60,387 nt of DNA from Klebsormidium nitens (Eukaryota; Plantae; Klebsormidiophyceae). The position numbers and the translations under genes are program-made. The notes under the pieces are model-generated. The model ran no database searches and was not told the origin of the DNA. It saw nothing but the letters and a program-made list of their open reading frames with translations. Each line of letters starts with the position of its first letter. Positions within the stretch are counted from its first letter, which is position 1. Location: positions 5,770 to 66,156 of the forward strand of contig DF237467.1 of NCBI GenBank assembly GCA_000708835.1, written 5' to 3'. Positions 1 to 9,605 of this stretch are shown piece after piece.

Positions 1-852
1 CTTGTTGACCCGGGTGTATGTGTGTGGCTCAGTAACTTTGAAGCACTCTCTTGACGCACTGTTGTGGTTCAGCAAACGCAATGCACAGGTGTGAAATATC
101 TCTTTTTGAACAGAGTTTGTGGGTCATATGGTTAAAGAACAGACTTCTTCGAAGAATCCCGTCCTTCTTAGAACATAGCTTTTGAGCCCGTGTCAAATCT
201 GTAACCTTGAAATGTCTGCATGCAAGTTTGTCGTGGAATATTGCTTTCATAGCTGACTTTCTGTAAGATCGTTTCTCAAGAAAACTCGTGACCACATTCT
301 GTAATTTTGCTTCATCTCTTGTAATTCGTATACGTTCTTGTTCTGATCGGAAGCTATGGGGGGTGGGCTGTCTCAAGCCGGAGTATTCTTCCATTTCGAC
401 GAAGCCTCAATATCAGCAGAGAAGCCCGAGTACTTGTTTCTATCTGGGCTGCGGCAGTATGTCTCCATGAAAACTCTGCAAGATGACGTCACTTTAGACA
501 AAAAACTTTGTGTCCCGCTTGTACTCTCGCAGAAAGCGGCCGTTTAATATTTCTTGATAGTGAGTTCCGCTTGTCAAGCTATTGAGCTCAAACGGACAAA
601 CGACGGATAAAGAGAGGGCTTGTGTTTTCCAAAAGCCCTCAATTTGAAACCACGCCAACTGGGCGGGCAGCTATACCCGTTTCCGGACCAACCTCTGTTT
701 CGATACGATTTGTTGGATCAGTCCCATTTCCTTCCTTCAGTCGACCACCCTTAGGAATCTGTGAGGTTAACGAGTGAGTAGATTTCTCATTCAGTGCACT
801 ACAAAGAAACGCATGTAGTTCCTGAACCTCTGGATCCTGTTCATTCCCTCAG

Positions 853-1156
853 GGCCACGCCCACGTCATCACGTGGCTCGTCAACAACGGCGCTGACATC
901 AACGTCATCAAAACGGACGACTGGAACGATTCGTTGCTGCACTATGCCGCCGCAAACGGACACCAAGAGTGCGTCGAAACGCTGCTTTCCGTAGGGGCGG
1001 ATCCGACTGCGACCAATTTCGAGGGGGCGACCCCCGCGGATCTCGCCAGAAAGGGGGGTTACGGTGACCTGGCAAAGATACTGATCGAAGCGGCGTCGGA
1101 CTGGATTCGGCGCGAGTCGTTCCGCATGACCGCACTACAACTGAAGGAGGACGCAG
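853..1156 (+). other. Ankyrin-repeat exon (about 2.5-3 repeats)
   Basis: GHAHVITWLVNNGADINV..DSLLHYAAANGHQECVETLLSVGADPTATNFEGATPADLARKGGYGDLAKIL matches the ankyrin consensus. Acceptor ccctcag ends at 852; donor gtgggt starts at 1157. Confidence 0.92.
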
Positions 1157-4100
1157 GTGGGTGAGCTTTTGGATTCGCCATCGAAGTCGAATCAGATCTT
1201 ATAGCCCAGATGGAGATTTCTGCAGATTGGATACACCTGGAAAAGCACTGGAGTACGTACGTCAGTGAAAAACTACTCATGGGATTGAGGTCCTGCGATC
1301 ATGCCGCCATGATTCTTTACGATCTGGCGCCAGATCGCTAGTGAAGTAGAGCTCTCTTGTCTGCCCTTCACTTGCAAGATAATCGCAAACCACATTGAAG
1401 AGAGGTGCTCAAAAAGTGATCGGCCATCACGCAGCAGTGAGAACTTCTATCTTTCTTTGATGTCACCTTCCGTTGTTTACTTTTGTTTGAGGAGATACCG
1501 AGCCACACGGCTGAGTCGCGCAGAGCACGACAACCACTCAATCCTGGCCCCTGAACCAACCCATCAAGTCACTTCTCTCCGGTCTCTTGACTTATGTAGA
1601 TTTTCTGATGACCCCCCCTCACCTTGCAGAGATGCACAACGACGGTCTGGGCAGCTCCTTCCGGCGCGAGGTGGCGCAGCTCGACCGGATCCTGAACGAG
1701 GCCGCTGGGCCACCCCCAGAAGGCGAAAACAACGACCGCCTGAGCACTATCGACGAGAGCGGCAGCAGTTTTGGCACGGGGCCGCACAGCGAAAACAGCG
1801 GCCCGCACAGCGGCCCGATTAGCGGTTCATCCGTTTCGGGGGGGTCGTCCCCCGACTCGCGGCCGCTCTCGGCGGCGTCCCCCCCGAACGAGCTGGAGAT
1901 GGCGAGCCTGGCGCGGGAGTACAACCTGAAGCCCGCCAGCCAGGTGCAGCTAACCGTCGCGGTTAAAACGCACCCGGAGCCCAAACCCGAGGAGGTTAAG
2001 AAGGCGGACACCCCGAAAGACGTGGACAAGGACGTTCCGGAGGACTCGTGGATCATCGCGAACCGGAAAGAGCCAGAGGGGTGGTCTTCCATGCGGAAGG
2101 AACACACACCGGAAGACGAGAGGACCTTCAAAGAGTATATTAACCGCGGGTGGGAGGGGTTGGGAACTGAGGGAACACAACTGCGCAGCGGTTGGCCGCT
2201 GTTCCGCGCATCGGCGATCGTGTGCCAGTCGCTGGGGGTGATCTACATTGTGTGGCGCGCGATCCGCACGTTCAACATCGAGTCGCTGTGGCTCAGCGTG
2301 CCGTTCTACATGGCCGAGCTGGTGTCGTTTATCCCGTCTTTCATCTTTTGCCTCGAGGTGAGCGGTTTTGTGGGCAGATATTTGTCTCGTCTGAAGTAAC
2401 CAAAGTTTGACTTGGCAACTCTTATCGAGAGGAATGTACTCGAAGCGGTTCGACCTCGCGGCAATTCTTGTAATACAAGACTTTGTGCTTCTTTGATTCT
2501 TCTTCTTTGTGCTTCTTGATTCTTCTGCATCTTAAGAAAGCAGTCAAGAATGAAATGAGGAAATGGGTTTTCGAACCTTGTGAAAACAATACGAGTGTCT
2601 TCTCGTAGACGTTGGGACCCGTTTTTTCGCCGCTTTCGACGGAAGTTCTGCAATTTTGGCTTCGGGGTCTCGCAGCAGAGTTCCAAATCAATTCGCTCGG
2701 GACTTCACTGCCGTCAGCATTCACGCTCGACCCTTGACGCAAGTTCTAGTTTGGAGACCTCTTTCGTTATCAGAGGAGTAAGAGTGACATGTCCCATTCG
2801 CCAAGAACTCGCACGTCTTACGACTCTTTCTAACTCCCCTCCCTCTCTCCCCCAGGTCTGGTGCCCCGCATACCGCCCCCCCCGCAATCTCTCCCAGATG
2901 GACGGACTCACCGAGGCCGACTACCCGTCGGTTGACATCATCATCGTCTGTTACTCGGAGCCCGTAGACATCGTGGAAGCCACCGCTTGCGCTGCGCTCA
3001 ATCTGGACTACCCCGCCGATAAGCTGACGGTGTATATCTGCGACGACGGCAAGAAGGACGAGATGCGCGCCATGGCGCACAGACTGGAGTTCCAGCGCCG
3101 CTACCTCAAGCGCCAGGCGCCGCTGATCTACGTCAGCAGAACCAAGGTGGGTGACGTCAGCGGGGGCGCGTTGGGGTGGTTTCGGTTCGCTCTTCTCGAG
3201 CGTTGCGTCTGTTGGTAAAATGCCATATTTGGTAAAATGTGGTGGTCAAAGGGTCGGGTCGCAAGAAAGATACATTAAGAGTCCGCTTGTCATAACTGTT
3301 GACGCCAGCAGGACTGACGCAGCAGCAACGCAAACTGGTCAGTGGACCTTCTAAGAGACGCTCAAGAGTAGCAAACTTTCAACGTCTCTTTTTTAACCTG
3401 GCCGCAGGTCAAGGGGATCTCCCACCACGCCAAGGCCGGAAACATCAACAACCTGCTCCTCAAGGGGGGAGCACGTGGCGACTTCGTGGTCGTTTTTGAC
3501 TGCGACATGATTCCCAAGCGGGAGTTCCTCCTACGAACAATCCCGCACTTCTTTCGGACTAAGCCTGGCGGGGGCTGGGAGCAGAAGAACCGGGCCGGCT
3601 TCTTGCAGACTCCACAGGCAAGTCATACGCCCGAGAATAGTTGACCCTGACGAGCTGATTGTGCTCTGTGATTTTGGGTCGAGTATACTCGCTGCTGGGC
3701 TCTTGTTTAAAGGATGACCGCATTCTCGGTTTGAATCTTCATAAATTCAGACGGGGCTGCTTCAAGTCTGCCTTAGGAGGCCAAAACAAAGAACAGTGCT
3801 CGACGTCAAAGGTTTTGTGCCTTCGCCCACAGCAGGTGCAATATGCAGAAAAGTTCGTCACTTAAAAAATCGAGTTGCCCAATTGCAGCTGCAGCGAGAT
3901 GCACAACCCGTCTAAAAGAGCGAAGAAACTTACAAACTAGGTTTGAAGCAGACGGCTGACGCAATTTGTTCGACAGGACTTCTACAACTTGGAAGCCAAC
4001 GACCCGTTCGGCAACCGCGCCCGCTTCTTCTACGGCCCCATGATGCAGGGCCGCGACGGCGTGGGCAGCTGCCCCTGCGTCGGCACAGGCGTCATCTTCC

Positions 4101-7100
4101 GGCGCGAGGCGCTCATCTCGATGGGCGGCCAGGTGGGCAGCCTGATGACGTTATCCTGACGCGGACATAGCACGCGTCGTGTGGTTCAACTCTCCAGGCA
4201 GTTCTTCCGCAGAGTTTGCGCTTGGGTTTCCCATCTAGTCAGGCAGTGGGTTATACCTGCTCCGCTGGCAGAGCTTTTGACGGTTGGGAAGAATCTCAGT
4301 ATGCTGGTAGTTGCTGGCTCGTTACGCAGAGGCACAGGTCAGAGTGGGATTCAGCAGCTACATTTGCGGTCACTTTCAGAGCAATCAATCTTGCTTCCAT
4401 CAGTAGCAAGGTTCGAGCACGGATATAACTGCACTCTTAACGCATCTTTCGGAAGGGGCTCCCAAGCTGCTTGCCCAGAGCCTCCTTTGCGTTTTTCACT
4501 CCTTCTAACTCTTTCAACCGGACTTTCAAGCCTCAAGCTCTTGTGAAACGTCTCAATCACCGCGTTCTTTCTCCAGGCGTACGGCAGCATCACGGAGGAC
4601 TACAACTCGGCGATGGGCCTGCTGGGCGGCGGCTTCTCCAGCATGTTCCTCAACGAGCTGCTCATCTTCGGCATCGCGCCCGATGACGTCATGACCGTGC
4701 TCACGCAACGTCAGCGGTGGGCGATGGGCAGCCTGCAGATCCTCTGCCTGGACAACCCGCTGCTCAACGGGGGGCTCACCATACCGCAGAGTCTCCTCTT
4801 CTTCCAGGTAAGGATTCAGAGTCCAAGATCTGAGCGCTGACAACTAAAGAAGTGTGAGGATTTCAGGAACCTTGACCAGCGGTGTCTCGAGGGAGCTTCA
4901 AAGCGTCGCAGTTTCATATCGTTCCCCGCTTTTGGCCTCAAGCATTTTGACAGGCGTTTGGTTGCGAACGGTCACTGTTGATAAGGTATGCTTCGCAAAA
5001 TGTCAATGGAATCGGTACTTTCTGCAAAGCTTTAAAGTCTTTACCTGGAATGCGGCCTGTACTGCCCTATCCGATTCACGATGGGCCTTCACAGGGTTCC
5101 AATGAGGCTCCGGCCACTGCCTCTGCAACTTCTCAGAACCGGTCGTGAAGCTCCTTCACTTTGAGTCCCTTTAACGCCATATTCCGCGACCAATACTAAC
5201 CGAAGCAGCTTAAGCAGCTTCAGACACTGCGGTTTTAGACTAACCATGACCCACTTTTTCTTCTGCAGTCGTGCATACAATACACTCTGGCGCTGCCGAC
5301 TCTGCTGATGGCCCTTGTGCCCATCCTGTTTCTGTTCTCGGGCATCTCGCCAATCCACGCCAAAGTGCACGAGTTCCTCGTCTTCTTCATCGGCTACTAC
5401 CTCGCCAACCGGATCATGCTCTTCCTCGCTCACAGGTAAGCGGGAAACGGCCCTTGTCAAGTCTAAAACTCACAGAGGTTCTTTATGTAACCATGGGCTC
5501 TTTGAACGAAACGGAACAGCGGAACGGCCGCGGGTGGGGATAGGAGGGAGATCGAGATTGCTCCTGCGTTTTTTCAAAGAGGATGCCCAAAGCTTGACAC
5601 ATGCCGCATCTGCAGGCTTATCACCGTTTTGTTCTTTGATAAACGTTCCGAAGTAGCATTGGAAAGCTTTGCATAAGAGGGAACGTTTTCCACCGAATCA
5701 TACTCGCTCGATGGATGACAAAAGTCAAGTCCCTGTTGGCTCGACACCACATTTGGACATGTTCTTTCCATGTGGGTGCCCAACGCTTGTCACAGAGAAC
5801 AAGTGAACGTTTCAATATCGACGCATCTTAGAGGCGACCGAAATTAGGTCCCTGCTTCCAAGGCCTTGACGGTAGATTTGTACCTTTTCGTTCCAAGGGG
5901 TGCTAAAACAAAATGGATAATTGCCATGGCTATACTTTACGTCTGAACGTTTTCGTTCCAGGGGGGTGCCCAACGCGGGCATGGAGATGTGGCGCGGGTC
6001 GCAGCAGTGGGTGTGGCTGGTGCCCAACAACCTGGTGTCCTGCTGGAAGGCGTTCTCCACCGAGCTCGCCATCTTCAAGTTCTTCAAGCTCGGCAAGGTG
6101 AGCGCGTAACGCGTTGCCGTCTGCTTACATGGGCGGCGGATTTTGACGACCATCAGCAAGTGCTCAGTTTCGGCGTCAGAAACTTCCTCTTGTCATACTG
6201 TTGGACGCGCCTGCGGCTCCGGATTTTTTAGAAAGTGCCCGGATTATCCGTGTACACCACCCTTTTGAGAAGACAGTTATGGGTACCTTGCCCTTAATGG
6301 CTACTCTGACACGGGCATCTTTTGTCGTTCAGCTCGGTTTCACCGTGACCAACAAAGACGGTAATGACGACTGGAGGGAGGCCTTGAAAGTGACGTGGCC
6401 CTTTTTCACTTACTACATCGGGATGACGGCAGGGATCATCTATACCATCGTGTTTGTCGGCATCGGGAGCTACGGCATCGAGGTAAGAAGTCTGCCGCCC
6501 CGACTGCGTGTCTCAGGAACTTTGCTGGCCAGTTTCTTCCTAAAGAGCAGGCGTGTCGTTGTTACGTGGAATGTACCTCTTAGGAAAACACCGAGCTACT
6601 TGTCTGATTTAAACTCTTCCTTGTGGTCAGACCGCGCAGCGCTTGAGTCTTGGGAAAGAACTGGCATCGCATGAATCGTCACTGACTGAACGCGATCGCA
6701 CCGAGTTGACGCCTTTTCTTTTCCTCTTGCTTTTCTAGGCTGCAGCTTCCCGAGTTGTGGCTTTCGCCTGGGGGATCCTCGTCTGCATGTACATCTGGCC
6801 GGTAAGAGGCCCCGACCGCTCCGCTCGATCTGAGGTAACATTCAATCGACGGCATCACAGAATGGCGTCTACCAGTCCCGATGCTGACTTTGCCCGTCTG
6901 CTATACGCACAAAATGTAATTTTGGCTTTTTCTTGTTATGAAACGCGACTCAAATACTTCTCGCACGAATCTCGTCACGATGTCCAAAGAGACGTTACCA
7001 GAGGAATCAGAGATTACGGGAGCATGCCCCATATTCTGGCGCCAACGGGCGGCGCTTGCAAGCCGCACTTGTCCTTTTCTTTGGTCTCCCCCTTCGTTTC

Positions 7101-9605
7101 GTGCCTTCGTTCTACTTTCCTTCCATCACGCCTGCAAAATCCTGCTTAGCTTACGACCATCATAAAGGTCTTGCTTCCGCTCGTAGGACACCGTTAGACA
7201 GACGCCGCCTCCACAAACCGCCTTGCATGCGCACGTGCTGTCGTCGATCCCTGCAAGCAATGATATCTCAATATTTTCTGATAATTTCGCAGTCTTCTTG
7301 CTTTCTACAAAAGAGATTCATGAAAAGCAGGCGAGCATCTAAATCTCAGGAGAGAGTTGACCCTATTGACCCAAGAGAGAGAGAAACTCTGTGTGAGCAG
7401 AGGGAGCAAAAAGGAAAACAATGACGAGGCTCCCCCTCTTACTGAAATGCCTTCCGGTTTCTCTTTTCCTGCTTCGCAATCTACGTTGATCAGTCGGTGA
7501 CATCCCCCGGCCTAAATATTTCTGCAGCCCATCGAAGGATCCCCGCCGATCTCCAATATAAGCTGGTTGCATGGGGCCAAGCACACGGGCGGCGCCGTCA
7601 AGTGGGAAAACGACACGTCACTGGCCTCGCCCGGCTCTCACGCCTCTCCTAAAACCCCCGGACCGGCGCGGCGGCTGTCTTTCCAGCGCCTGAAGTCCTT
7701 CGGGCGAATGCCGTCCATCAAGAAGCAAAATGTCGAGGATTTGGAAGGTGAGCTATCACTGGGCGTCGGCGTGTTTCGGACGTCACTTTGCCGACGGCGT
7801 CTACACATTCCGGTCAGCAATTTGACGAAGATATCGTTTACCGTGATGTTTGAAAGAAAAGGTGTCACGCTCACCACAACGAACACCATTCTCACGTTTG
7901 CAAGGTTGAGTGTTCGACGCACTAACTAGTACATTGTTCTGGTCGTAGGGCTCTCACCATTCAGAGCTAGGGACCAGGGTCAAATCATGGGCAGTCTCGT
8001 GCGTTCGGAATGACTTGATCGGGTCTAACTTGGAACAGGGATCAGGCTGGCTCGTGACTCGTAGATCTGAGCCAATGAACGGTGAAACAGCCCTGTCATT
8101 CTAAACCCTGCCAATGCTCTCTTACAGCGCCCCAGATTGCAGAGGCGATCGCGATCGTGCCGTCGACTCCCGGCCGCAACGGCCTCCTGATGACACGTCA
8201 GCAAGTAATCCCGATCGAGGAGCGTGAGCTCAGCCTCCTGTACCAGATGGTCCGCAAAAACGAGACCGGGGGACAACCGGTCGTGTCTCCGGCCTCAAAC
8301 GCCCCCGCAATGTCCCCGGTTGAGCTCCCCCGGTCAGCAATTCCCGAGGAAGAGGAGCTGGAAACGGTAGCGGTAAAGAGCCCGGTTGTTACCCCGCGCG
8401 GGAGCCCCACCGAGAGTGACACGTCATCGGAGCGGTCGAGCAAGATGGAGCAGTTCAAGAAGATGCAGGGCATTAGCCTCATGTCACTGGACGGCGCAGC
8501 AGACGTGGCGGTAAGCGGCCGCGTAATAACGCTTATGGCTCCGCTCTTTCAGCGGGCGCTGGAAGTAATGGAATCGGTTTACAGCCAGAGGTGGGGACCG
8601 TCCGATTGCCTTAGGTCTGTTCTGAAGCCGTTTACGCGCGCTCGGCCGCTATAGCACCGTCAGACTCTGGTCGCCCTGCGGATGAAAAGGGCTGTGGATT
8701 TGGAACTTGGAAAGTCTTCCTGACTTTCTTCCTCGCGCATCCAACTGTTTGTATCGAAGTTTTCCCTTGCGGATAAACGATGCTCCCTTCCAATCCAAGG
8801 CGTCACCTCGAAGCAACACCTCTGCTTGAGCCCGTTCAAACAATATGCACTCATCTCGTCTTTCGTTTCTTGCCAGATCGACATCGCCGACCAAAGCCCT
8901 GAGAACCCCATCGAGGACCCGCGCGCCGCGCACGCGCGCAACCCGCTCGGCGCGCTCCTCACCGGCCGCCGCGTGGGGCCGGCCGCGCTCAACGCCCCGG
9001 CCGCGGCAAAAAAGTCGCCCATCTCTAGGGCACTGGACGCGCTCGCGCTCCCGACCCCACGCGCACCCGGGCCTACTGCGCGCGCGGAGCCCGCGACGCC
9101 CGTCATGCCGTCGCCAAAGGTCGCGACGCCCCCAGTCGCGATCGAAGAGTATTACTCGCTCGTGACGCCGCGGCTCCGCGCGCGCACCTCGCCCCAGCTG
9201 CGCGCGCGCATCTCGCCGCAACTGCGCCCGCGTTCGGGCGCGAGCACGCCGAGGAGCGCGCGCGCGTCGCCGCGCGTGAACAACCTGGAGGAGGTCGTCC
9301 TGGCGTCGCCGCTGCTCCTCGGCGCGGGCCGGAAGGAGAAGGACTGGCCGAGCGACAACGAGAGCGAGGGATTTGAGGAGTTCAAGGAGAAGATGACGAC
9401 CCGGGCAACGTACATCGACCACGCGAGCCTGCACGCGCGCCCGGTGTTTGAGCTCAAGGCCGCGAAAACCGCCGGGGGGGAGGGCATGCGGCCCCACGTG
9501 ACATTCGTCGTGGTGAACACGCTGCTTCTGGCCGGTTTCATTGCTGGGGGGGTGGTTTACGTGTTCAAACTGTCGCTCGACAGCAGCTGGCTGGGCATTC
9601 ATTGA
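853..9605 (+). CDS. Ankyrin-repeat / BcsA-type cellulose-synthase-like GT2 processive glycosyltransferase, 5'-incomplete, at least 1255 aa
   Basis: Exons 853-1156, 1630-2357, 2856-3146, 3408-3617, 3977-4132, 4577-4807, 5269-5435, 5962-6097, 6333-6482, 6739-6801, 7528-7747, 8128-8510, 8877-9605 (3768 nt, all phases compatible, stop TGA 9603-9605). Motifs: YIVWR..AE (N-terminal TMs), PSVDIIIVCYSEP, LDYPADKLTVYICDDG, HAKAGN, FDCD, QTPQ, SITED, QRQRW, FTVTNK, plus several TM segments. The start codon was not located, and an extra small exon in 6802-7527 cannot be excluded. Confidence 0.9.
9165..9236 (+). repeat. Three imperfect 24-nt coding repeats (TPRLRART / SPQLRARI / SPQLRPRS)
   Basis: Read directly in the last exon of the GT2 gene. 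Confidence 0.75.

What the first reader, a model, noticed from the sequence alone, without database searches (positions are those of the whole stretch)
2856..6482. GT2 core is compact and BcsA-like, lacking the plant P-CR and CSR insertions
Seen: only about 37 aa separate DDG and HAKAGN, and QTPQ leads to CVGTG..RREAL..GG..SITED with no long insert. All processive motifs are intact (DDG, DCD, TED, QRQRW), as is an FxVTxK gating loop (FTVTNK). Established: plant CESA/CslD carry P-CR and CSR inserts at these positions, whereas bacterial BcsA and Dictyostelium, oomycete and red algal enzymes lack or reduce them. Inference: this is a prokaryote-type beta-glucan synthase in a green-lineage genome, either ancient or horizontally acquired and then intronised (12 introns). 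The product could be cellulose or mixed-linkage glucan.
Basis: partly seen in the sequence, partly recalled or inferred. Interest (0 to 1): 0.7.

Follow-up and report, generated by a model that had tools for sequence, protein, structure and literature searches.

The report
Known algal bacterial-type cellulose synthase gene
This is a real, expressed gene of the alga Klebsormidium nitens for a compact cellulose-synthase-type enzyme, but it is already annotated and most likely belongs to a family (CslP, the non-rosette type) already described in green algae.

Summary
The + strand gene at 850-9602 encodes GAQ89401.1, "cellulose synthase catalytic subunit [Klebsormidium nitens]", 1360 aa. DDG and HAKAGN are 38 aa apart, and there is no insert between RREAL and TED. 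Plant CESA structures carry about 100 and about 125 extra residues at these two sites.

Spliced contigs from four studies confirm nine introns, so the gene is expressed.

The core aligns collinearly with BcsA (E 1e-49; plant CESA 2e-22). An AlphaFold model (pLDDT 93.6) superposes on BcsA. There is no PilZ domain. The protein has an N-terminal ankyrin domain and a long disordered tail.

In the phylogeny it sits in a strongly supported green-algal clade that splits into streptophytes and chlorophytes. That clade is sister to stramenopile cellulose synthases. This argues for ancient inheritance in the green lineage and against recent transfer.

This matches the CslP family described by Feng et al. 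2024 and the earlier "linear terminal complex" CESA subfamily. The product is untested; cellulose is the most likely.

This scan had already noted the ankyrin exon of the same gene (s1-277598).

The parts
850..1155 (+). Exon encoding ankyrin repeats (protein aa 105-206). Earlier exons for aa 1-104 lie upstream of the window.
   Evidence: tblastn and exact mapping of P0300; Pfam Ank_2/Ank hits at aa 67-170
1629..2357 (+). Exon encoding a disordered Ser/Pro-rich linker and the two transmembrane helices that precede the catalytic domain; GT donor at 2358
   Evidence: helices 16-40 and 44-70 of the model; joint 2357/2856 in spliced contigs
2856..3146 (+). Catalytic exon with DDG (3042-3050), which binds UDP
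   Evidence: joints confirmed
3408..3617 (+). Catalytic exon with HAKAGN (3426-3443), DCD (3498-3506) and QTPQ (3606-3617); followed by a GC-AG intron at 3618-3976
3977..4132 (+). Catalytic exon with CVGTG (4076-4090) and RREAL. Plant CESA has its CSR insert directly after this segment; here there is none.
4577..4807 (+). Catalytic exon with TED (4592-4600, catalytic base) and QRQRW (4706-4720, acceptor-binding Trp)
5269..5435 (+). Exon encoding transmembrane helices after the catalytic domain; ends in phase 2 (AG|G codon split)
5962..6097 (+). Exon encoding the conserved WRGSQ segment and the helices before the gating loop
6333..6482 (+). Exon with the FxVTxK gating loop (FTVTNK, 6339-6356) and the next transmembrane helix
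   Evidence: F470 and K475 are invariant in 64 sequences
6739..6801 (+). Short exon encoding part of the last core transmembrane helix
7528..9602 (+). Three exons (7528-7746, about 8127-8510, 8877-9602) for a roughly 430-aa low-complexity C-terminal region that ends in a transmembrane helix; no PilZ domain
   Evidence: mapping; no Pfam hit after aa 791; C-terminal piece 9426-9566 matches Nannochloris homologues

Best explanation
The stretch is the catalytic core of the expressed K. nitens gene for GAQ89401.1. This is a membrane-embedded, processive family-2 glycosyltransferase of the non-rosette eukaryotic cellulose-synthase lineage. It is the family named CslP in streptophyte and chlorophyte algae, and the earlier 'linear terminal complex' type.

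Inferred mechanism, by homology with BcsA:
- A cytosolic GT-A domain binds UDP-glucose through DDG and DCD.
- The Asp of TED acts as catalytic base.
- The Trp of QRQRW holds the acceptor end of the chain at the mouth of a channel formed by six core transmembrane helices.
- The FTVTNK loop closes over the substrate.
- The growing beta-glucan is pushed out one sugar at a time.

The protein lacks the PilZ domain, so it cannot be switched by c-di-GMP the way BcsA is. It also lacks the P-CR, the CSR and the RING finger that plant CESAs have. It therefore probably works as a single or linear-array particle. The ankyrin domain and the long disordered tail are the likely regulatory or docking parts.

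The gene was inherited vertically within the green lineage since before the streptophyte-chlorophyte split. Any bacterial origin is much older. The most likely product is beta-1,4-glucan (cellulose).

Shown: gene structure, expression, motifs, fold, clade. Inferred: chemistry, product, regulation, oligomeric state.
For: Identity and expression: P0300 maps at 96-100% per exon to 850-9602 and carries the names GAQ89401.1 and A0A1Y1IJT9. Spliced contigs were found in four studies.

Catalytic core: phmmer to Rhodobacter BcsA gives E 1.1e-49, collinear over 384 residues. E. coli BcsA gives 6e-44; plant CESA gives 2e-22 over a part only; CslF6 gives 4e-14. TIGR03030 CelA gives E 1e-79 over profile positions 67-532 of 714. 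The AlphaFold model has pLDDT 93.6 and pTM 0.91. Its best Foldseek matches are BcsA (TM 0.73-0.79 in 544-587 columns). Plant CESAs need 720-745 columns.

Conservation: D133, D134, E296, D297, Q333, R336, W337, F470 and K475 are invariant in 64 sequences.

Clade: the careful IQ-TREE run gives a eukaryote clade at 100/99, a green clade at 100/99, a streptophyte subclade at 99/97, and K. nitens with Chlorokybus at 99/96. Two quick trees on other samples agree.

Literature: the CslP description fits on distribution, length of about 1,474 aa and affinities. About one third of Klebsormidium wall residue is alpha-cellulose, and lichenase released nothing from the pectic fraction (PMC11688530).
Against: No biochemical test of this protein or of any CslP member was found. 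The related CslO/Tft1 branch makes mixed-linkage glucan or arabinoglucan, so the product cannot be read from homology. The CslP assignment therefore rests on matching descriptions. K. nitens also has plant-like CESA homologues that could account for its cellulose (PMC4023592). The lichenase test covered the pectic fraction only.
Confidence: 0.8

Rival explanations
1. Same enzyme family and mechanism, but the product is a non-cellulosic beta-glucan, such as (1,3;1,4)-beta-glucan or an arabinoglucan-like polymer, as in the related CslO/Tft1 enzymes.
For: Feng et al. place CslP next to CslO. CslO holds the moss arabinoglucan synthase and clusters with the fungal mixed-linkage glucan synthase Tft1. 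The motifs cannot tell the linkage. K. nitens has other CESA-like genes for cellulose.
Against: Lichenase released nothing from the Klebsormidium pectic fraction. The nearest characterised relatives by sequence and fold are cellulose synthases. CslO proteins are about 659 aa, whereas this family is 1200-2000 aa.
Confidence: 0.2
2. The gene was recently acquired from a bacterium by Klebsormidium and then gained introns.
For: The BcsA-like core. Only 1 of 12 intron positions is shared with a chlorophyte homologue, and the Pycnococcus homologue has no introns. Introns were therefore gained lineage by lineage.
Against: The closest relatives are eukaryotic (53-56% identity to Chlorokybus and two other sequences that group with it, source organisms unknown; 42-49% to chlorophytes). 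The best bacteria reach 33-40%. The tree follows the streptophyte-chlorophyte split. The ankyrin fusion and the C-terminal helix are shared across green algae. Exon GC is 63.5% and intron GC 49.7%, with ordinary splice sites.
Confidence: 0.03
3. It polymerises another sugar (mannan, chitin or poly-GlcNAc, hyaluronan-like) and not glucose.
For: GT2 processive synthases share the same fold (hyaluronan and chitin synthases also appear). JGI labels relatives 'cellulose synthase/poly-beta-1,6-N-acetylglucosamine synthase-like'.
Against: PgaC and NodC models score E 5e-11 and 1.5e-7, against 1e-79 for CelA. Hyaluronan and chitin synthase structures match far worse (TM 0.37-0.56). From my own knowledge of these families, TED followed by Y is the glucan/mannan form of the motif, whereas chitin synthases and NodC have EDR.
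Confidence: 0.05

Closest known systems
CslP, cellulose-synthase-like family of streptophyte and chlorophyte algae (Feng et al. 2024, Nat Genet, PMC11096116)
   Same: BcsA-like GT2. Present in streptophyte and chlorophyte algae and absent from land plants. Long proteins (mean 1,474 aa; this one is 1360, relatives 1200-2015). Groups with non-plant eukaryotic cellulose synthases and with cyanobacterial CesA.
   Different: Direct co-clustering with the Zygnema type members could not be tested. The paper does not mention the ankyrin domain and names no K. nitens gene in the text I could read.
Bacterial cellulose synthase BcsA (Rhodobacter sphaeroides 4HG6/4P00; E. coli 7LBY)
   Same: Collinear catalytic core, all catalytic motifs, FxVTxK gating loop, six equivalent transmembrane helices, compact loops at the P-CR and CSR sites.
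   Different: No PilZ domain. No two extra N-terminal helices of the BcsA type. CxGTG in place of FFCGS. N-terminal ankyrin repeats, a 430-aa disordered tail, and a eukaryotic intron-rich gene.
Non-rosette eukaryotic cellulose synthases (stramenopile and red algal CESA; 'linear terminal complex' subfamily of Ulvskov et al. 2013, PMC3797821)
   Same: Sister clade in the tree, containing Nannochloropsis 'cellulose synthase', Tribonema, Vaucheria and Mucochytrium; Gracilariopsis joins it on a long branch. Same 63-residue QTPQ-to-TED spacing and the same CxGTG motif.
   Different: Those proteins lack the ankyrin domain. The green clade is separate with 100/99 support.
Land-plant CESA/CslD (e.g. 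poplar CesA8 6WLB, soybean CesA3 8VHT)
   Same: Same fold (TM 0.76-0.81), the same D, D, D, QxxRW chemistry, DCD and a VGTG-type motif. Exon 4 finds plant CESA as its best solved relatives.
   Different: Lacks the RING finger, the P-CR (about 100 aa) and the CSR (about 125 aa). Sequence match is only E 2e-22, over a part of the core.

Membership tests
BcsA (TIGR03030 CelA equivalog) | GT-A core with DDG, DxD, TED and QxxRW motifs | tested here: met
   Motifs located; invariant in a 64-sequence alignment; collinear alignment at E 1e-49
BcsA (TIGR03030 CelA equivalog) | FxVTxK gating loop between the last transmembrane helix pairs | tested here: met
   FTVTNK at 6339-6356; aligned with the BcsA loop; lies between helices in the model
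BcsA (TIGR03030 CelA equivalog) | C-terminal PilZ domain that binds c-di-GMP | tested here: not met
   No PF07238 hit, although bacterial hits carry it. The CelA profile is matched only over positions 67-532 of 714, at 268 bits against a cut-off of 699.
BcsA (TIGR03030 CelA equivalog) | Works with a periplasmic BcsB partner encoded in the same operon | not tested
   Eukaryotic monocistronic gene; I did not search for a BcsB homologue
Land-plant CESA/CslD | Plant-conserved region (P-CR) between DDG and the HxKAG motif | tested here: not met
   38 residues here. Equivalent points are 104 residues apart in 8vht and 4 apart here.
Land-plant CESA/CslD | Class-specific region (CSR) between the RRxAL segment and TED | tested here: not met
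   4-7 residues here, against 126-134 in 6wlb and 8vht
Land-plant CESA/CslD | N-terminal RING-type zinc finger | tested here: not met
   Pfam finds only ankyrin repeats in the N-terminal part
CslP (Feng et al. 2024) | Found in streptophyte and chlorophyte algae, not in land plants | tested here: met
   Named hits are Chlorokybus and many chlorophytes, plus a chytrid. No land plant appears among the 120 best hits of three searches.
CslP (Feng et al. 2024) | Long proteins (mean 1,474 aa) with a BcsA-like core, grouping with non-plant eukaryotic CesAs and cyanobacterial CesA | tested here: met
   1360 aa, relatives 1200-2015 aa; tree; description
CslP (Feng et al. 2024) | Forms one clade with the type members Zci_01910 and Zci_11882 | not testable with these tools
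   The Zygnema sequences could not be fetched. The published trees are images without readable labels.
CslO / fungal Tft1 (mixed-linkage glucan and arabinoglucan synthases) | Short proteins (about 659 aa) that cluster with Tft1 and moss Pp3c12_24670 | tested here: inconclusive
   Length and distribution do not fit, but no CslO or Tft1 reference sequence was available for the tree

The most novel reading that the evidence does not exclude
The ankyrin-GT2 (CslP) enzymes may be the catalytic subunits of the non-rosette terminal complexes seen in green algae. In that case the cytosolic ankyrin domain and the disordered tail would do the regulatory job that PilZ does in bacteria. Alternatively, they may make a beta-glucan that is not cellulose. 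Either reading would give this uncharacterised family a defined role in algal wall building before the rosette evolved.
Probability: 0.3. Interest if true: 0.5.

Novelty: already known. Interest (0 to 1): 0.2.

Why it matters
The gene itself adds little. It is annotated as a cellulose synthase, and its family, its bacterial-like core and a proposed bacterial origin are already in the literature. What remains open is biochemical: no member of this green-algal family has been assayed. Knowing its product would show how early streptophytes built walls alongside, or before, the plant-type CESA. A small correction to the common view also follows from this work. Lack of P-CR and CSR is not a mark of 'prokaryote type', because bacterial relatives have their own large inserts at the same two loops.

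Tried and rejected
Exons were searched one by one by reference. The full-length analyses used the public protein P0300 that a search returned, after I checked that it matches the exons.
- The first word search, with a 774-aa relative, missed the K. nitens protein because of the length window.
- The exhaustive search with exon 2 alone gave mostly fragments and no name.
- I looked for K. nitens gene identifiers or CslP membership lists in the Feng et al. supplements and found none. The trees are images.
- No paper mentions GAQ89401 or A0A1Y1IJT9.
- A search for ankyrin plus cellulose synthase in green algae found no discussion of the fusion.
- Intron-position comparison was meant to date the gene but is weak evidence. 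Only one position (after QTPQ) is shared with Micractinium.
- The bacterial sister group is unresolved, because the three bacterial groups are joined with only 92/78 support and the root is unknown. A cyanobacterial origin is suggested only by the higher pairwise scores.
- Recent transfer, a pseudogene and a non-glucan product were considered and rejected or rated low (see the rival explanations).
Full report
**What is there.**
Three-frame translation and reading of the DNA show an intron-rich gene on the + strand. The finding's range 2856-6482 runs exactly from the first base of the DDG exon to the last base of the gating-loop exon.

A protein search returned P0300. This is GAQ89401.1 / UniProt A0A1Y1IJT9, "cellulose synthase catalytic subunit [Klebsormidium nitens]", 1360 aa. 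It maps exon by exon to 850-9602 at 96-100% identity; the one lower figure, 84%, comes from an alignment that runs into an intron. The window holds 13 exons and 12 introns of this gene. The first 104 residues are encoded upstream of the window.

Exons were searched singly by reference, and the full-length work used P0300.

**Expression and gene model.**
Twenty public runs from six studies hold about 0.2-0.3 of the sampled words of 2856-6482. That is close to the exon share of the stretch, which is 1341 of 3627 bases. Contigs from four runs of four studies skip all nine introns between 2357 and 7528 at the predicted borders, with no differences. Eight of these introns are GT-AG. The intron at 3618-3976, directly after QTPQ, is GC-AG. 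Exon GC is 63.5%, intron GC 49.7% and window GC 51.5%.

**Compactness, measured.**
DDG and HAKAGN are 38 residues apart. QTPQ to TED is 63 residues, with ...RREALISMGGQ running straight into AYGSITED. I searched the exons separately against solved structures to measure what plant CESAs add.
- At the P-CR site, points that are 4 residues apart here are 104 apart in soybean CesA3, 8vht.
- At the CSR site, points that are 4-7 residues apart here are 126 apart in poplar CesA8 (6wlb) and 134 apart in 8vht.

Plant CESAs therefore carry about 100 and about 125 extra residues at these two sites. Against BcsA the core aligns collinearly with only small gaps.

**What kind of enzyme.**
- Pfam finds ankyrin repeats (aa 67-170) and the GT2/Cellulose_synt domains (aa 473-791), and nothing after that.
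- phmmer of aa 380-930 against PDB gives Rhodobacter BcsA 1.1e-49, E. coli BcsA 6e-44, plant CESA 2e-22 (partial) and barley CslF6 4e-14.
- NCBIfam CelA (TIGR03030) gives E 1e-79 but only 268 bits, against a cut-off of 699. The match ends at profile position 532 of 714, before the PilZ part. PgaC and NodC models are far weaker.
- An AlphaFold model of aa 380-930, built on a 64-sequence alignment, has mean pLDDT 93.6 and pTM 0.91. It shows two helices before the GT-A domain and four after it, with the gating loop between the last pairs.
- Foldseek ranks BcsA first (TM 0.73-0.79 in 544-587 columns). Plant CESAs follow with equal TM scores, but in 720-745 columns, which reflects their inserts. 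Hyaluronan and chitin synthases match much worse.
- D133, D134 (DDG), E296, D297 (TED), Q333, R336, W337 (QxxRW), F470 and K475 (gating loop) are invariant across the 64 sequences.

The inferred mechanism is therefore that of BcsA: UDP-sugar binding, Asp base, acceptor held by Trp, gating loop, and coupled translocation through the protein's own channel. This is homology-based inference, not something shown for this protein.

**Relatives and history.**
The nearest proteins share the whole ankyrin-GT2 layout.
- Chlorokybus atmophyticus: 56% identity over the core.
- Two unnamed sequences, one a transcriptome ORF from EukProt and one from a public-run assembly: 53-55%. They group with K. nitens and Chlorokybus in the tree.
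- Many chlorophytes: 42-49%. These include Micractinium, Hariotina, Scenedesmus, Tetradesmus, Nannochloris, Picochlorum, Symbiochloris, Chlorella and Pycnococcus/Pseudoscourfieldia.
- The chytrid Boothiomyces.

After these come cyanobacterial proteins of about 800 aa (Acaryochloris, Leptolyngbya, Picosynechococcus; E about 1e-100), then stramenopile proteins, then PilZ-bearing BcsA (about 1e-50).

A careful IQ-TREE analysis (64 rows, 555 columns, LG+C20 PMSF) gives the following support values:
- one eukaryote clade, 100/99;
- within it a stramenopile clade (100/99) and a green clade (100/99);
- within the green clade a streptophyte subclade (99/97), with K. nitens next to Chlorokybus (99/96), and core chlorophytes (100/99);
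- the chytrid pair sits inside the green clade with weak placement (64/75).

Two quick trees, one on a 101-row sample and one on the 64-row alignment, agree. In the 101-row tree the red alga Gracilariopsis joins the stramenopile side on a long branch.

The gene tree thus tracks the streptophyte-chlorophyte split. The ankyrin fusion is also shared across that split. Together these argue for vertical inheritance since early Viridiplantae. The bacterial sister group is unresolved.

Intron positions say little. Only the position after QTPQ is shared with Micractinium. The Pycnococcus gene has no introns and Nannochloris has three.

**Comparison with the literature.**
Feng et al. 2024 analysed 17 genomes, including K. 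nitens. They defined CslP as a BcsA-like family of streptophyte and chlorophyte microalgae that is absent from land plants and has a mean length of 1,474 aa. CslP lies close to CslO (moss arabinoglucan synthase, fungal Tft1) and to the cellulose synthases of oomycetes, tunicates, amoebae and red algae. Its closest bacterial relatives are cyanobacterial and Chloroflexi CesA, and the authors propose an origin by transfer from bacteria.

Ulvskov et al. [quoted passage not shown]

My results fit the CslP description on every point I could test. I could not place the Zygnema type sequences in my tree, and no paper names GAQ89401. The ankyrin domain is not mentioned in Feng et al..

Another note (s1-321836) reports a second bacterial-type GT2, fused to a GH9 domain, elsewhere in this genome. 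An unnamed relative with GH9, ankyrin and GT2 domains (P0203) turned up in my searches.

First, compactness is not simply "prokaryote type".
- The nearest cyanobacterial relatives carry 134-272 residues between DDG and HAKAGN. In the relatives of about 800 aa this includes an HATPase_c_2 domain, at aa 204-328 in Picosynechococcus.
- The actinobacterial and spirochaete relatives carry about 150 extra residues between QTPQ and TED.

These two loops accept inserts in several lineages independently.

Second, the segment encoded by exon 4, with CxGTG, finds plant CESAs and not BcsA as its best solved matches. BcsA has FFCGS at that place.

**Product.**
Nothing in the sequence fixes the linkage. Three things favour cellulose. 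The nearest characterised relatives are cellulose synthases. About a third of Klebsormidium wall residue is alpha-cellulose. Lichenase released nothing from its pectic fraction. Two things count against certainty. The CslO/Tft1 relatives make other glucans, and K. nitens also has plant-like CESA homologues.

**Verdict.**
It is very probably refuted on its own novelty criterion, since the gene fits a described Csl clade. This is a known, annotated gene of a described family. What is left is a biochemical question.

Noticed in passing
window 3618-3976: This intron, directly after the QTPQ codons, has a GC donor (cag|gcaagt ... cgacag). Contigs from three of the four runs laid skip it exactly; the other eight introns checked are GT-AG. 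It is also the only intron position shared with the Micractinium homologue.
   Followed up: partly
P0311 aa 204-328, P0387 aa 214-326 (cyanobacterial relatives); P0209 and P0327 (actinobacterial and spirochaete relatives): The closest bacterial relatives have large inserts at the same two loops where plants have P-CR and CSR. Cyanobacteria have an HATPase_c_2 domain between DDG and HAKAGN. The actinobacterial and spirochaete proteins have about 150 extra residues between QTPQ and TED. These loops look like insertion hot spots of the fold.
   Followed up: partly
P0196, P0197 (Boothiomyces sp. JEL0866), locus L005: A chytrid fungus has ankyrin-GT2 proteins that sit inside the green-algal clade. 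The gene is almost intron-free. This suggests transfer between green algae and chytrids, but the direction and support are weak (64/75).
   Followed up: partly
window 3977-4132: On its own, this exon (DFYN...CVGTG...RREAL) finds plant CESA structures as its best solved matches (E about 1e-3) and no BcsA. The CxGTG motif is shared by the green and stramenopile clades, while BcsA has FFCGS.
   Followed up: partly
window 7528-9602: The last three exons encode about 430 low-complexity residues rich in Pro, Ser and Ala. They end in a transmembrane helix, and that end piece (9426-9566) is conserved in Nannochloris homologues. No domain was found there.
   Followed up: no
window 1-849 and upstream of the window: The annotated protein's first 104 residues include a predicted N-terminal membrane helix and the first ankyrin repeat. 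They are not encoded in the window, so the gene starts upstream of base 1.
   Followed up: partly
P0203 (ENA contig, 1114 aa): An unnamed relative combines a GH9 cellulase-like domain, ankyrin repeats and the same GT2 core. This parallels the GH9 fusion that this scan noted elsewhere in the K. nitens genome (s1-321836).
   Followed up: no
loci L002 (Pycnococcus), L001 (Nannochloris), L003 (Scenedesmus), L004 (Micractinium): Intron load of the homologues ranges from 0 (Pycnococcus) and 3 (Nannochloris) to 19 (Scenedesmus) and 30 (Micractinium). Scenedesmus and Micractinium share four to six positions with each other.
   Followed up: partly
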